A stretch of 64,000 nucleotides of DNA from Macrostomum lignano (taxonomy: Eukaryota): contig NIVC01003770.1 of NCBI GenBank assembly GCA_002269645.1, positions 1 to 64,000 of the forward strand. The letters run 5' to 3'. Both the position numbers and the translations under genes were made by a program. Shown in pieces: positions 6,697 to 12,600 of the stretch. How positions within the stretch are numbered: the first letter of the stretch is position 1; each line of letters starts with the position of its first letter. A model generated the notes under the pieces. That model was not told where the DNA came from, made no database searches, and saw nothing but the letters and a program-made list of their open reading frames with translations.

Positions 6697-9600
6697 CTGC
6701 AGTAGATAGAGAGAAATTAGTTTTCTTAATGCTCTACTGTCAGTAGCTCGTAGGCTTGTAGGATGAAAAAAGTAATATAGAACTCTACTAACCCGGGCCA
6801 GCCCTCGAATGTGGAGGTGGCAAATAGAGACAGCATGGCGTGAGCCACGTCATCAAAATTGAGATCCTCATTCTCCCATTCTCTCTCCTTCATCACGGGC
6901 TTGGAGATGTCGTTGTCTTTGTAGAAAATGAAGTAGCCCTGGCACTCTGCTTCCGTAGACTTGGATCCGTCGTTGCACTTTCTGAACTTGCCCTTGAACA
7001 GCTGAACACCGATGACGGCGAACATGAACTCGAGCAGGAAGGTGACCAGCATGATGTTGCCGATGCTCTTCACCGCTACGATCACGCATTGTACGACGTG
7101 CTGCGGATTGGGGATTGCAGATTGGGGTTTTGCTGCTTTTAGAAGAATGCATTAGGGAGGGGTCGCAAACCTCAACCAAGCTGGAAGGGTAACATACAGT
7201 TTAGAAATTGTTTCACAAAGTCCCGTTTTGTCGTGAGTTTGAATTTGAACTTTTTTTTTAGCAATTGCGAGTTTAATAGCGCGATTACTCAGCCTCACCT
7301 TGAGCCCCTTGGCCCTGTTGATGGCGCGCAGCGGCCGCAACACTCGCAGAACTCGAAGAATTTTCACGACCGAAAACGTGTCCGAACTGAAAATTGAAGT
7401 ACGAGATGAATTTATCAATACGTGAGACACAAGTTCACTTTTTTTAATTTAAAATCTTTTTAAAAGTACATTATGCACACGCTTTGAACTTTAGAATGCA
7501 TCAGGTAGCTAAAGCATCTACCTGTGACTATGCAAAAACTGCTGCAAACAAGAACGGATCAAAATTTCCGCCACCACAGGCTAAAAACGTTTGATTTGAT
7601 TTCTGCTCAGTTCACGAAATTGCAATCGCTGGCAATTCTTCATGTAACACTTTTTCTCTCATTCACTGGCAAAGCAAACAAAGGTGTATAGCATTCCGAA
7701 GTCCACAGCTTTGAGAACTGCGGTGCACTCACGGCGAGAATAGGGACATTAAAGCTACAGACACAACCAGCAGGTCCAACAGGTTGAATGTGGACCTGCA
7801 GAAGGAGCCTTTGTGCAGGATCACACCGTAAGTGACCACCTGTGCATTGTATTGTGCATTTGGTTGTATCAATAGTTGTTAGATGGCTAACTATACTAAA
7901 CTCAATAATGTAGCTACTCAACAAACTAATAAAGAAACAAAAGTAATTATTAAACATAATAATTTATCACTAGGCACAAAAAGGACGACATAGATTGAAC
8001 AAAATTGAGTGCATAAGTAATGTAATGTTTAGCGAAAATGTGGGTTACATGTAGGTTAATGATGACTAAAAAATAATATGTTACTTTACACCAACCTGTG
8101 ACCTTAGTTTAAAATTAATTAGAAACAAAAATGTCCTCAGGCTAGACATGGGATTCGTCAGACTAGAATTGAGATTCCTGAGCCTATAGAGTTAGGATTC
8201 TAGATTGTAGTCTAGACTAGATTGTAGTCTCGAGTTGGGATTCCTCAGACTGGAATTGGGATTCCTGAGACTATAGAGTTGAGATTCTAGATTGTAGTCT
8301 AGACTAGATTGTAGTCTCGACTAGATTGTAGTCTCGAGTTGGGATTCCTCAGACTGGAATTGGGATTCCTGAGACTATAGAGTTGAGATTCTAGATTGTA
8401 GTCTAGACTAGATTGTAGTCTCGACTAGATTGTAGTCTCGAGTTGGGATTCCTCAGACTGGAATTGGGATTCCTGAGACTATAGAGTTGAGATTCTAGAT
8501 TGTAGTCTAGACTAGATTGTAGTCTCGACTAGATTGTAGTCTCGAGTTGGGATTCCTCAGACTGGAATTGGGATTCCTGAGACTATAGAGTTGAGATTCT
8601 AGATTGTAGTCTAGACTAGATTGTAGTCTCGACTAGATTGTAGTCTCGAGTTGGGATTCCTCAGACTGGAATTGGGATTCCTGAGACTATAGAGTTGAGA
8701 TTCTAGATTGTAGTCTAGACTAGATTGTAGTCTCGACTAGATTGTAGTCTCGAGTTGGGATTCCTCAGACTGGAATTGGGATTCCTGAGACTATAGAGTT
8801 GAGATTCTAGATTGTAGTCTCGACTAGATTGTAGTCTCGAGTTGGGATTCCTCAGACTGGAATTGGGATTCCTGAGACTATAGAGTTAGGATTCTAGATT
8901 GTAGTCTAGACTAGATTGTAGTCTCGAGTTGGGATTCCTCAGACTGGAATTGGGATTCCTGAGACTATAGAGTTGAGATTCTAGATTGTAGTCTAGACTA
9001 GATTGTAGTCTCGACTAGATTGTAGTCTCGAGTTGGGATTCCTCAGACTGGAATTGGGATTCCTGAGACTATAGAGTTGAGATTCTAGATTGTAGTCTAG
9101 ACTAGATTGTAGTCTCGACTAGATTGTAGTCTCGAGTTGGGATTCCTCAGACTGGAATTGGGATTCCTGAGACTATAGAGTTGAGATTCTAGATTGTAGT
9201 CTAGACTAGATTGTAGTCTCGACTAGATTGTAGTCTCGAGTTGGGATTCCTCAGACTGGAATTGGGATTCCTGAGACTATAGAGTTGAGATTCTAGATTG
9301 TAGTCTAGACTAGATTGTAGTCTCGACTAGATTGTAGTCTCGAGTTGGGATTCCTCAGACTGGAATTGGGATTCCTGAGACTATAGAGTTGAGATTCTAG
9401 ATTGTAGTCTAGACTAGATTGTAGTCTCGACTAGATTGTAGTCTCGAGTTGGGATTCCTCAGACTGGAATTGGGATTCCTGAGACTATAGAGTTGAGATT
9501 CTAGATTGTAGTCTAGACTAGATTGTAGTCTCGACTAGATTGTAGTCTCGAGTTGGGATTCCTCAGACTGGAATTGGGATTCCTGAGACTATAGAGTTGA

Positions 9601-12600
9601 GATTCTAGATTGTAGTCTCGACTAGATTGTAGTCTCGAGTTGGGATTCCTCAGACTGGAATTGGGATTCCTGAGACTATAGAGTTGAGATTCTAGATTGT
9701 AGTCTAGACTAGATTGTAGTCTCGACTAGATTGTAGTCTCGAGTTGGGATTCCTCAGACTGGAATTGGGATTCCTGAGACTATAGAGTTGAGATTCTAGA
9801 TTGTAGTCTCGACTAGATTGTAGTCTCGAGTTGGGATTCCTCAGACTGGAATTGGGATTCCTGAGACTATAGAGTTGAGATTCTAGATTGTAGTCTCGAC
9901 TAGATTGTAGTCTCGAGTTGGGATTCCTCAGACTGGAATTGGGATTCCTGAGACTATAGAGTTAGGATTCTAGATTGTAGTCTAGCCTAGATTGTAGTCT
10001 CGAGTTGGGATTTTTTTATTATTTTTATTAGAGGCAGGGGGTTGTGTGCACCCTGGCGCACTTTAAAGCGACATAGGCACACAACCGGCGAGAGGCATTA
10101 CTGCCCATTCCGCCGACTCCCCTGAGCAGGCATACAAGCGCGCGGATACGTACGCAGGCACACACTCACACAGGAGTGTACAGCGGCACTAACTTTATAT
10201 TATCGTTAGGCATGTACACTTCACTGCGCCTTGGGGGGTTGGCTCTCAAGGCCGTTAATTGCACGAGCAGAGCCAAGCCGAGATTCCAATTCAGCCCCAA
10301 ATTAATGTGACTGCACTTGGAATCGAGCCTGGGTCGCTGGCACACCAGAGCAGCTGCGCTACCGCTGGGCTACGGCCCCCCTTCTAGAGTTGGGATTCCT
10401 CAGACTGGAATTGGAATTCCTGAGACTATAGAGTTGGGATTCTAGATTGTAGTCTAGACTAGATTGTAGTCTAGAGTTGGGATTCCCCAGACTGGAGTTG
10501 GGATTCCCCAGACTGGAGTTGGGATTCCCCAGACTGGAGTTGGGATTCCCCAGACTGGAGTTGGGATTCCCCAGACTGGAGTTGGGATTCCCCAGACTGG
10601 AGTTGGGATTCCCCAGACTAACGTGACAATAAACAAAATTAGCTGCTATTTAGTAAAGCTAAATAATTGCTGCACAATATTTACAATCCGGCTATATTAA
10701 TTTAGACACCTCAGTCAGACTTTAAAATAAGCACACCGGAAACTTACTGCCCAGTAATAATAATAAATAAAGTAGATACACAAACGAAAGGAAATAACAG
10801 CAAAAGCCCATAGAGACACGCGACACCAAGCAGCTGAGAGCAGTCGATTTCAGCTGGATGTCTGGCAACCTACTCAAGAAAGAATGAGGCTAAGCTAGTG
10901 AGCACGACCAGAATATCGAGCAGGTTGAAGGCCTGCCGACAGAAGGAGCCGTCGTGCAGCACGAGTCCGTAGGCTGTCACCTGTAGATTACAGTTTTTGC
11001 ATCGAGTTCGCTGGGGATGGTTAGTCGCTTATGACTGACTACTCAACAGTTCAACTGAAATTTTTTTAAACTGTGCCATCGATGCTATAGTCCTACTAAT
11101 AGTAGTTTACGTACTCATGGGATTTTCGTATTTAGACAGCTATTTAGCAATACGGGGTTGTAGCCTAGTGAGTAGAGCGTCGGACTCGCAACTGAAAGGT
11201 CGGGAGTTCGATTCTCGACCCACTCGTAACTATTAACTAACTATGTCGTTAAGCAAGACACTTAACTCTGCATTGCTGCAGTTCACCCAGCTGTAAAATG
11301 GGTTCCAGCATTAGCTGGGGTAATTGAGGGTGTGTGTGGCAACCCCCCCCCCCAGTCCTTGGACTGAACAGCCGTACGCAGCCTTCAGATGCGCCGCGCA
11401 ATAGCTGCGGCTGAGCTGTCAGTTGCACATCTGTCCATTAGGTGTCCATTAGGACAGGTGTAATCAATTACTGTTATCATTATTACGAAATAAAATAACC
11501 GTTTGTCTTACCTTCAAGATGATTTCTATAGTAAATACCGTGGTGAAGAAGTAGTCAAATTTGTTTAGAATCTGCAATCAAATGGGAGTTCAGGTTGGGA
11601 AATTGATTAATAGAACTCTCGAGATTCAGGTGGGTGGAAAGTGAAATTTTAGCCGTTTTGGTCTAAGTCGGTAGAAGCAGTGGCGTACGCAGTGATTTTA
11701 ACTGGAACAGGCTGTACCCCAAGGGGCGCCAATATTTGCGTCTTGGTGGGCGACCCTGTCTCTTGGTGGGCGCCTCTGTCTCTTTGTGGGAGCCGCTGTC
11801 TCTTGGTGGGAGCCGCTGTCTCGAGATGGGAGCCCCTGTCTCTTGGTGGGCGTCCCTGTCTCTTGGTGGGAGCTGTCTCTTGGTGAGAGCCGCTGTCTCT
11901 TGGTGGGCGTCCCTGTCTCTTGGTGGGAGCCGCTGTCTCTTGGTGGGCGTCCCTGTCTCTTGGTGGGAGCCGCTGTCTCTTGGTGGGCGTCCCTGTCTCT
12001 TGGTGGGAGCCGCTGTCTCTTGGTGGGAGTCCCTGTCTCTTCGTGGGAGCCGCTGTCTCTTGGTGAGAGCCGCTGTCTCTTGGTGGGCGTCCCTGTCTCT
12101 TGGTGGGAGCCGCTGTCTCTTGGTGGGCGTCCCTGTCTCTTGGTGGGAGCCGCTGTCTCTTGGTGGGCGTCCCTGTCTCTTGGTGGGAGCCGCTGTCTCT
12201 TGGTGGGCGCCCCTGTCTCTTGGTGGGAGCCGCTGTCTCTTGGTGGGAGCCGCTGTCTCTTGGTGGGCGTCCCTGTCTCTTGGTGGGTGCCGCTGTCTCT
12301 TGGTAGGCGTCCCTGTCTCTTGGTCAGAGCGTCTTATATGCTCACCTTGTTTCTGGGATTCTCCGAGTTGACGGGTTCCTCGGCGGCCAGCATGGCGCTG
12401 CTGACGAGGATGCAGACCAGCACCACGCTGCCGAAGTAAGAGTGGTTGCAGATCCTGTGGCACAGCACCCGGAACCGGTTGGTGCTGCTGAAGACGAACA
12501 ACGAGGACGCCTCTGGAATTGGGCGGACTTTCTCTTTGATGTTCAGCTCGGACAGCCGGCGCGGTCTGGCGGTCGTCACCGGCGTCTCCTCAGCCTCGGA

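What the first reader, a model, noticed from the sequence alone, without database searches (positions are those of the whole stretch)
7733..10980. Tandem duplicated, mutually exclusive IIIS3 exons (13A/13B) at a position not duplicated in vertebrate Cav1.2
Seen: two homologous exons, each exactly 107 nt, phase 0-2, with intact AG/GT sites and open frames, 3 kb apart. A reads [36 protein letters not shown]; B reads [36 protein letters not shown]. Including both or neither shifts the frame. Established: vertebrate Cav1.2 has mutually exclusive exons 8/8a, 21/22 (IIIS2) and 31/32, while its exon 23 (this segment) is single. Here IIIS2 is single and IIIS3 is doubled. Inference: an independent, convergent exon duplication that tunes voltage sensor III via a D/K swap in the S2-S3 loop and a D/P swap at the S3-S4 linker, probably enforced by NMD.
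Basis: partly seen in the sequence, partly recalled or inferred. Interest (0 to 1): 0.78.

Follow-up and report, generated by a model that had tools for sequence, protein, structure and literature searches.

The report
Alternative voltage-sensor exons in flatworm Cav1
A flatworm (Macrostomum lignano) L-type calcium-channel gene carries two old, selectively maintained copies of the exon for helix S3 of voltage sensor III, only one of which can be used per mRNA; this is a further independent example of a known way ion channels diversify, not a new mechanism.

Summary
On the minus strand there are two homologous 107-nt exons, A (10980-10874) and B (7839-7733). Both have AG/GT borders and open frames, and they sit between a single IIIS2 exon and the IIIS4 exon of a Cav1 gene.

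The window is Macrostomum lignano, a Mlig000393 copy. All four M. lignano Cav1 paralogues have the same S2-A-B-S4 layout. All eight exons are 107 nt. A exons group with A, and B with B. Within-type dN/dS is 0.04-0.16 while dS is near saturation, so the duplication predates the paralogues and both copies are under selection.

RNA-seq-derived GenBank models use A alone in this gene and B alone in a paralogue. Including both exons, or neither, shifts the frame. I found a single IIIS3 exon in spider, ostracod, two flies and a tapeworm.

The type-defining differences lie inside S3. Use of B in this gene, and enforcement by NMD, are not shown. This copy also has a frameshift in IS2 and no domain IV, so it may be a damaged duplicate.

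Recurrent independent exon duplication in Cav channels is already documented, so I rate this a new member of a known kind.

The parts
12346..12719 (-). Constitutive exon: end of the II-III loop plus IIIS1 (...NPRNK|gtgagc)
   Evidence: Sequence and splice sites; 99% match to P0241 residues 895-1020
11512..11571 (-). Single 60-nt IIIS2 exon ([20 protein letters not shown]), phase 0-0. It corresponds to the vertebrate exon 21/22 position but is not duplicated here.
   Evidence: the only IIIS2-like hit between IIIS1 and exon A
10874..10980 (-). Exon A, 107 nt: last turn of S2, S2-S3 loop, all of S3 and the first linker residues ([36 protein letters not shown]). Donor is gtaggt.
   Evidence: Used alone in the RNA-derived GenBank models P0241 and P0242. 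A-type exons are conserved in 4 paralogues at dN/dS 0.08-0.16.
7840..10873 (-). Intron of 3034 nt between A and B. It is mostly a minisatellite (8137-10012 and 10390-10619), interrupted by a roughly 380-bp GC-rich insert. The repeats are not shared with the paralogues, whose A-B introns are 782-1673 nt.
7998..8005 (-). Candidate intronic element ATTTTGTT, 166 nt upstream of exon B. The same 8-mer lies 39-118 nt upstream of exon B in the other three loci.
   Evidence: 18/2000 Markov resamples give any shared 8-mer. The evidence is weak and does not allow for the several k values tried.
7733..7839 (-). Exon B, 107 nt, homologous to A ([36 protein letters not shown]). Donor is gtgagt.
   Evidence: B-type exons are conserved in 4 paralogues at dN/dS 0.04-0.08. 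A B-type exon is used alone in the RNA-derived model P0246 of paralogue Mlig000343.
7299..7386 (-). Constitutive 88-nt exon: rest of the S3-S4 linker plus IIIS4. Its first base, T, completes the split codon ([29 protein letters not shown]).
6793..7100 (-). Constitutive exon: IIIS5 and the pore loop (HVVQC...TFEGWPG)
6495..6696 (-). Constitutive exon: IIIS6 (...ELDKNQ|gtgagc). This is the last Cav1 exon present in the window.

Best explanation
The window holds a copy of a Macrostomum lignano L-type (Cav1) calcium-channel alpha-1 gene.

Shown. The exon for the end of IIIS2, the intracellular S2-S3 loop, the whole S3 helix and the start of the S3-S4 linker was duplicated in tandem before the four Macrostomum Cav1 paralogues diverged. 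Both copies keep their length, phase and splice sites and evolve under purifying selection. RNA-derived gene models contain A without B, or B without A. Because each exon is 107 nt, only single inclusion keeps the reading frame.

Inferred. In each pre-mRNA the spliceosome joins IIIS2 to either A or B, and that exon to IIIS4. Double-inclusion and double-skipping products are probably removed by nonsense-mediated decay or give truncated protein. Exon choice is probably made by trans-acting factors working on weak acceptors and on the type-specific donors (A: GTA[CG]G, B: GTGAGT). It is probably not made by a conserved RNA docking structure. The two isoforms differ in residues lining S3 of voltage sensor III, next to and two turns above the conserved S3 aspartate, and so probably differ in voltage dependence or kinetics of activation.
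For: Anatomy.
Species and gene: P0241 (PAA65287.1, M. lignano) matches the window at 97-100% per exon. The best solved-structure matches are domain III of Cav1.1, Cav1.2 and Cav1.3.
Four paralogous loci (window, L005, L006, L007) all show S2, A, B, S4 with eight 107-nt AG/GT exons.
Identities: A-A 71-94% aa, B-B 66-91%, A-B 51-66%. Within-type dN/dS is 0.04-0.16 with dS 0.65 to saturated, similar to the constitutive IIIS2 exon.
The paralogues are monophyletic in 100/100 bootstraps, so the exon duplication predates them.
RNA-based GenBank models: A-only in Mlig000393g1 and g4, B-only in Mlig000343g1. That annotation comes from StringTie/TACO on RNA-seq with isoform-frac 0.75, which explains one isoform per locus (PMC5730564).
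Frame test.
Structural mapping: exon = residues 95-130, S3 helix = 111-128.
Against: No transcript evidence that B is used in this particular gene, or that A and B alternate within any one gene. I had no access to RNA-seq junction counts. NMD is untested. No regulatory element is established: the paralogous introns share nothing except one 8-mer. The window's own copy has a frameshift in IS2 and lacks domain IV, so it may be non-functional or misassembled. The functional effect on gating is argued from position alone.
Confidence: 0.75

Rival explanations
1. Partition among paralogues rather than alternative splicing. Each Cav1 paralogue constitutively uses one exon (A in Mlig000393, Mlig024222 and Mlig027667; B in Mlig000343), and the other exon is silent or only a trace isoform in that gene.
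For: Each RNA-derived GenBank model contains only one of the two exons, and no locus has both an A model and a B model.
Against: Both exon types keep length, splice sites and low dN/dS in all four loci over divergences where dS is 0.65 to saturated. An unused exon would have decayed. The annotation pipeline discarded isoforms below 75% of the major one, so one model per locus is expected even with real alternation.
Confidence: 0.15
2. Exon B of this gene is a decaying pseudo-exon, and only A is functional here.
For: Only A-containing transcript models exist for Mlig000393. Uniquely among the four B exons, this B ends in Pro instead of the Asp or Glu found in the others.
Against: W_B against L005_B gives dN 0.055 and dS 0.97. 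That is the same constraint as W_A against L005_A, with dN 0.054 and dS 0.65. B also has an open frame, a consensus gtgagt donor and an AG acceptor.
Confidence: 0.05
3. Both exons enter one mRNA through a cryptic donor inside exon A. The first 75 nt of A are joined to B, as in UniProt models A0A1I8JEW8 and A0A1I8GVU8, giving a channel with a partly repeated S2-S3/S3 segment.
For: Several UniProt-only models (P0121, P0122, P0243, P0244, and the paralogue models P0123, P0247, P0256) have exactly this structure.
Against: The donor would be GTC|gtgctc at window 10905, a poor match to consensus. The product would insert 25 residues into a transmembrane voltage sensor. None of the RNA-derived GenBank models shows it. 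This is the typical way a frame-preserving gene predictor handles a mutually exclusive pair.
Confidence: 0.03
4. Assembly artefact: two paralogues were joined, creating a false tandem pair.
For: M. lignano assemblies are highly redundant (PMC5730564), and this window has other oddities.
Against: The same A-then-B order is found on three other scaffolds of an independent assembly, with different intron lengths. A and B are far more diverged from each other than any pair of paralogues is within a type. The flanking exons are single.
Confidence: 0.02

Closest known systems
Vertebrate Cav1.2/Cav1.3 mutually exclusive exon pairs (8/8a IS6, 21/22 IIIS2, 31/32 IVS3)
   Same: Same gene family. They are also tandem-duplicated homologous exons of equal length encoding a transmembrane segment of the channel, with one used per mRNA. 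The 31/32 pair likewise replaces an S3 helix of a voltage sensor (PMC5748662; PMC9741552).
   Different: Different exon and an independent origin. Here IIIS2 is single and IIIS3 is doubled. Exons 21/22 are 60 nt, so double inclusion stays in frame and yields a non-conducting channel. The 107-nt pair here shifts the frame.
Recurrent, convergent tandem exon duplication in voltage-gated channels (Copley 2004; Martinez-Gomez et al. 2022, PMC9741552)
   Same: This is the general phenomenon. Ten independent events in human and Drosophila Cav genes all hit different exons, and paralogues sometimes each keep one exon, as CACNA1S and CACNA1F do.
   Different: This would be a further independent event, in a flatworm lineage and at an exon that the text I read does not identify among those ten. 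I could not see that paper's figure giving the exact positions of the two Drosophila Ca-alpha1D events. The Lucilia and Anopheles loci have a single IIIS3 exon.
Insect sodium-channel (para) mutually exclusive exons in IIIS3-S4, e.g. exons 27A-D of Liposcelis (PMC3805903)
   Same: Same structural position, S3/S4 of voltage sensor III in a four-domain channel. The insect isoforms are reported to differ in gating.
   Different: Different channel family (Nav, not Cav1), different phylum, no common origin.
Optional inserts in the IIIS3-S4 linker of crustacean Cav1
   Same: Splicing variation in the same voltage-sensor region of Cav1 orthologues: Artemia P0182 vs P0148 and Cherax P0215 vs P0168.
   Different: Those are cassette-type insertions in the linker. 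They do not replace the S3 helix with a homologous exon.

Membership tests
Cav1 (L-type) calcium channel alpha-1 subunit | Closer to Cav1 than to Cav2, Cav3 or Nav in sequence | tested here: met
   The domain III fragment scores 325-351 bits against Cav1.1, Cav1.2 and Cav1.3 structures, and about 244-256 bits against Cav3 and Cav2. The best annotated hits are L-type / Ca-alpha1D proteins.
Cav1 (L-type) calcium channel alpha-1 subunit | Four homologous 6-TM domains with a glutamate in each pore loop | tested here: inconclusive
   Domains I-III are present with pore motifs TMEGW, TGEDW and TFEGW. Domain IV is absent from the window but present in the near-identical full-length protein P0241.
Cav1 (L-type) calcium channel alpha-1 subunit | Intact reading frame in this copy | tested here: not met
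   There is a 1-nt deletion in the IS2 exon at 25297/25296 relative to P0241. I cannot tell whether it is a real mutation or an assembly indel.
Tandem-duplicated mutually exclusive exons | Adjacent homologous exons of identical length and phase, each with its own splice sites | tested here: met
   107 nt each, phase 0 to 2, AG/GT, 58% aa identity
Tandem-duplicated mutually exclusive exons | Both copies maintained by purifying selection | tested here: met
   Within-type dN/dS 0.04-0.16 across four paralogues, with dS 0.65 to saturated
Tandem-duplicated mutually exclusive exons | Mature mRNAs contain exactly one of the two, and both are used | tested here: inconclusive
   RNA-derived models are A-only in this gene and B-only in paralogue Mlig000343, and none has A+B. 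There are no junction counts, and no single gene has both forms documented.
Frame-enforced (NMD-type) mutual exclusion | Double inclusion and double skipping both shift the frame and create premature stops | tested here: met
Frame-enforced (NMD-type) mutual exclusion | Aberrant products are degraded by NMD | not testable with these tools
   Needs UPF1 knock-down or cycloheximide followed by RNA-seq
Docking-site / selector RNA-structure controlled exon clusters (Dscam type) | Conserved complementary intronic elements | tested here: not met
   No intronic similarity between paralogues in blastn-short. No 8-10-mers are shared except ATTTTGTT upstream of B, and only one of the four loci has a complementary copy in the interval.
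Steric or U2/U12-incompatibility mutual exclusion | An A-B intron too short to splice, or mixed U2/U12 splice sites | tested here: not met
   A-B introns are 782-3034 nt, and all donors are U2-type GT(A/G)...
Orthologue of the vertebrate exon 21/22 or 31/32 pairs | Same exon position duplicated | tested here: not met
   The IIIS2 exon is single. The pair encodes IIIS3.

The most novel reading that the evidence does not exclude
The A/B pair may be older than Macrostomum. An ancestral rhabditophoran flatworm Cav1 gene would already have had both IIIS3 exons. Neodermata would then have resolved the two isoforms into separate genes, each keeping one exon, as CACNA1S and CACNA1F did in vertebrates.

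Hints for this: Opisthorchis and Paragonimus Cav1 carry the A-type 'VVLTS' signature, while Schistosoma and Hymenolepis Cav1 carry the B-type 'VV.[VI]AL' signature. A and B never form a clade in exon trees (0/300).

Against it: each signature is a single substitution away from the common 'VS' state. B does not group with the Schistosoma/Hymenolepis type (9/300). The Hymenolepis gene has only one exon.
Probability: 0.12. Interest if true: 0.55.

Novelty: new member of a known kind. Interest (0 to 1): 0.36.

Why it matters
It adds an independent instance, in a third animal lineage and at a new exon, to the documented pattern that four-domain voltage-gated channels repeatedly evolve swappable voltage-sensor or pore segments by tandem exon duplication. 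The case is unusually clean for evolutionary analysis, because four paralogues have each kept both exons and so provide replicated evidence of selection on both. M. lignano also has RNAi and transgenesis, so exon-specific function in voltage sensor III could be tested in vivo.

It has a practical side too. The UniProt/WormBase protein models for these genes are wrong at this site, because they fuse a truncated A to B. Anyone modelling flatworm L-type channels as drug targets should take this into account.

Tried and rejected
(1) A short-query protein search (329 aa) found nothing above about 76% identity and missed the source species. The tool favours hits of about the query's length. A 1101-aa query identified M. 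lignano.
(2) I suspected an insect HD/HK pair from mosquito proteins. The Lucilia and Anopheles loci have one fused IIIS2+S3 exon, and arthropod isoforms never differ in IIIS3, so I rejected this.
(3) Conserved intronic docking/selector elements: none found.
(4) Rbfox, PTB, Nova, MBNL and CELF motif counts near the exons show no consistent pattern.
(5) A profile search for short A-only or B-only transcript fragments from Macrostomum or other flatworms returned no Macrostomum fragments.
(6) The Opisthorchis locus could not be fetched because the gene range is too long. Look-ups for Exaiptasia, Ochlerotatus and Rhipicephalus found no record.
(7) The exon-level tree is too short (35 aa) to date the duplication relative to Neodermata.
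(8) The tRNA-like appearance of the insert in the A-B intron is not confirmed by ARAGORN.
(9) My first frame calculation used an S4 exon one base short. It is corrected.
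Full report
OBSERVATION

The feature lies on the minus strand. Exon A occupies 10980-10874 and exon B occupies 7839-7733. Each is exactly 107 nt, is preceded by AG and followed by GT, and is open in the frame that continues from the upstream exon.

The upstream exon, 11571-11512, is a 60-nt phase 0-0 exon encoding IIIS2 ([20 protein letters not shown]). The downstream exon, 7386-7299 (88 nt), begins with a T. That T completes the split codon as Asp after A and as Pro after B, and the exon then encodes [29 protein letters not shown], which is IIIS4.

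A and B share 57% of nucleotides and 21 of 36 residues. The flanking intron sequence is unrelated. A tblastn scan of the whole window finds no third IIIS3 copy and only one IIIS2 exon. Joining IIIS2-A-B-IIIS4 gives a stop six codons into B. Joining IIIS2 directly to IIIS4 shifts the frame and gives a stop 106 codons later.

WHAT AND WHOSE GENE

Homologues map Cav channel exons from IS2 (about 25.3 kb) to IIIS6 (6696-6495) on the minus strand. A 1101-aa reconstruction finds Macrostomum lignano L-type channel proteins as by far the best hits. The full-length GenBank protein PAA65287.1 (P0241, BOX15_Mlig000393g1, 1973 aa) matches the window at 97-100% in each exon. The domain III fragment aligns without gaps to domain III of rabbit Cav1.1 (5gjv_A residues 789-954), and it scores clearly better against Cav1.1, Cav1.2 and Cav1.3 than against Cav3, Cav2 or Nav. 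So this is a Cav1 gene of a free-living flatworm.

THE PAIR IS OLD AND BOTH COPIES ARE MAINTAINED

M. lignano has at least four diverged Cav1 paralogues. I fetched the three others from an independent assembly: L005 = Mlig024222, L006 = Mlig000343 and L007 = Mlig027667. All three show the same order: IIIS2 exon, A-type exon, B-type exon, IIIS4 exon. All eight exons are 107 nt with AG/GT borders.

A-type exons are 71-94% identical to each other in protein, B-type exons are 66-91% identical to each other, and A against B is only 51-66%. Within each type, dN/dS between paralogues is 0.04-0.16, while dS runs from 0.65 to saturation. That is comparable to the constitutive IIIS2 exon next door.

The four paralogues form one clade, in 100 of 100 bootstraps on 751 gap-free columns, sister to trematode Cav1. 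Hence the exon duplication predates all the Macrostomum gene duplications, and neither copy has been free to decay since.

TRANSCRIPT EVIDENCE

The GenBank annotation of this assembly was derived from RNA-seq (StringTie/TACO plus a mapped de novo transcriptome). It used an isoform-fraction filter of 0.75 that keeps essentially one isoform per locus (PMC5730564).

- The models for Mlig000393g1 and g4 contain IIIS2-A-IIIS4 and skip B.
- The model for paralogue Mlig000343g1 joins IIIS2 directly to B and skips A.
- The models for Mlig024222 and Mlig027667 contain A and then read into the intron.
- None contains both exons.

By contrast, several UniProt-only models join the first 75 nt of A, through an internal GT, to all of B. 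That preserves the frame but would insert 25 residues into a voltage sensor, so I regard these as prediction artefacts. Thus A-only and B-only mRNAs both exist in the family. Alternation within one gene, and use of B in this gene, remain unshown.

WHERE THE DIFFERENCES LIE

An AlphaFold2 model of domain III (mean pLDDT 79.7) places the segments as follows:

- S2 at residues 71-98
- S2-S3 loop at 99-110
- S3 at 111-128
- a five-residue S3-S4 linker at 129-133
- S4 from 134

The alternative exon is residues 95-130. Seven positions separate all A exons from all B exons:

- position 2 (T vs I/V, end of S2)
- positions 16-17 (QA vs ST, entry to S3)
- position 23 (I/M vs L, next to the conserved S3 aspartate at position 22)
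- positions 28-29 (TS vs [IV]A, in the outer half of S3)
- position 35 (first linker residue)

Position 29 is seven residues from that aspartate. By helical periodicity it lies on the same face, two turns further along the helix; this is my inference, not a measured contact.

The terminal Pro of B is unique to this gene; the other three B exons end in Asp or Glu. A further consistent difference is the donor site, which is GTGAGT after every B and GTA[CG]G after every A.

MECHANISM

Shown: the frame incompatibility, the independent splice sites, the selection on both copies, and single-exon transcripts.

Inferred: exon choice is made by trans-acting factors, and mis-spliced products are removed by NMD.

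I found no support for three other known ways of enforcing exclusivity. The A-B introns are 782-3034 nt, so steric hindrance does not apply. All donors are U2-type. The paralogous introns share no alignable sequence.

The only recurrent element is the 8-mer ATTTTGTT, 39-166 nt upstream of exon B in all four loci. About 1% of resamples give such a match, before allowing for the several k values tried. It is a candidate binding site and nothing more.

The functional consequence, two versions of voltage sensor III with different gating, is argued by analogy with other S3 and S3-S4 splice variants of four-domain channels (PMC5748662, PMC9741552) and is untested.

DISTRIBUTION

The following loci each have a single IIIS3 exon:

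- Araneus, which has the same split of the 60-nt S2 exon, S3 exon and S4 exon as the window
- Cyprideis (ostracod)
- Lucilia and Anopheles
- the tapeworm Hymenolepis

Annotated arthropod isoforms never differ in IIIS3, though some crustaceans have optional inserts in the IIIS3-S4 linker. Vertebrate Cav1.2 and Cav1.3 have three pairs, at IS6, IIIS2 and IVS3. So independence from the vertebrate events is well supported.

Whether the pair is confined to Macrostomorpha is open. Trematode Cav1 shares the A-type 'LTS' motif, and Schistosoma and Hymenolepis share the B-type '[VI]AL' motif. However, the 35-residue exon tree cannot resolve this.

CAVEAT ABOUT THIS COPY

The window lacks one G in the IS2 exon, between 25297 and 25296, relative to P0241. 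This creates a frameshift.

No domain IV exon occurs in the 6.4 kb downstream of IIIS6, whereas the paralogues have the next exon within 0.1-2.7 kb. Unrelated ORFs lie there instead.

The GenBank model for copy g4 (P0242) starts just after the frameshift and ends by reading through the IIIS6 donor.

The window is therefore probably a damaged or truncated near-identical duplicate, or an imperfectly assembled copy, of the intact gene. The exon pair is the same in the intact copy, so the conclusion about the pair stands.

NOVELTY

Repeated, independent tandem exon duplication in voltage-gated calcium and sodium channels is an established pattern. The literature cites Copley 2004 and describes ten independent events in human and fly Cav genes, all at different exons, including sorting of the two exons between paralogues (PMC9741552). 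My searches found no description of a IIIS3 pair in any Cav1 gene or of alternative Cav1 exons in flatworms, but they cover only the open literature. I rate this a new member of a known kind. It is of moderate interest, mainly as a clean and experimentally tractable additional case, and as a correction to existing protein models.

Noticed in passing
window 25283-25308 (minus strand), deletion between 25297 and 25296: The IS2 exon reads ACC GCG AGT GCT GCT TGA where the near-identical protein P0241 requires ACC GCG GAG TGC TGC TTG. One G is missing, causing a frameshift and a stop. The GenBank model P0242 (copy g4) starts just downstream of this point.
   Followed up: partly
window 1-6494: No domain IV exons follow the IIIS6 exon, although the paralogues have the next exon within 0.1-2.7 kb. 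Unrelated ORFs lie there instead: EGF/Laminin-G-like at 473-1450 (-), FAD/NAD-binding oxidoreductase-like at 2734-3660 (+), and an unassigned 177-aa ORF at 5168-5698 (-). The Cav1 copy seems truncated or rearranged here.
   Followed up: partly
window 8137-10012 and 10390-10619, with an insert at 10013-10390: The A-B intron is mostly a minisatellite of 87/104-nt units, built from 17- and 21-nt subrepeats at 92-99% identity. It is interrupted by a GC-rich segment of about 380 bp that looks tRNA/SINE-like by eye, but ARAGORN finds no tRNA in it. The three paralogues lack these repeats.
   Followed up: partly
window 10904-10906 (minus strand) and proteins P0121, P0122, P0243, P0244, P0123, P0247, P0256: UniProt-only M. 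lignano Cav1 models splice the first 75 nt of exon A, via an internal GT, onto exon B, which gives a partly duplicated S3 region. This looks like a systematic annotation artefact at all paralogues.
   Followed up: yes
window 7998-8005 (minus strand); L005 -39, L006 -118 and L007 -53 relative to exon B: The 8-mer ATTTTGTT recurs upstream of exon B in all four otherwise unalignable paralogous introns (18/2000 resamples). It may be a U-rich splicing-regulator site.
   Followed up: partly
window 21431-22405 (+): A mariner-type transposase remnant (Pfam Transposase_1 and HTH_32) lies inside the Cav1 intron between the IS5 and domain I pore exons.
   Followed up: no
window, many introns (e.g. 12770-13230, 14840-15900, 26900-28260, 36470-37320, 43800-45270, 57330-57900): The introns and flanks of this gene are packed with long, very regular micro- and minisatellite arrays, which show up as long repetitive pseudo-ORFs in all frames.
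   Followed up: no
proteins P0148/P0182 (Artemia) and P0168/P0215 (Cherax): Crustacean Cav1 isoforms differ by optional inserts of 7-15 residues in the IIIS3-S4 linker. The same voltage-sensor region is therefore a splicing hotspot in another phylum, but through a cassette mechanism.
   Followed up: no
proteins P0129, P0017 (Opisthorchis, Paragonimus) and P0284, P0347, P0006 (Schistosoma, Hymenolepis): Neodermatan Cav1 genes come in two IIIS3 flavours. 'VVLTSIIS' echoes the Macrostomum A type and 'VVC[VI]AL[VI]S' echoes the B type. This could be coincidence or a trace of a deeper origin of the pair.
   Followed up: partly
window 60903-63218 (-): A long 771-aa open frame upstream of the Cav1 gene has no Pfam match. 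I did not examine it further.
   Followed up: no
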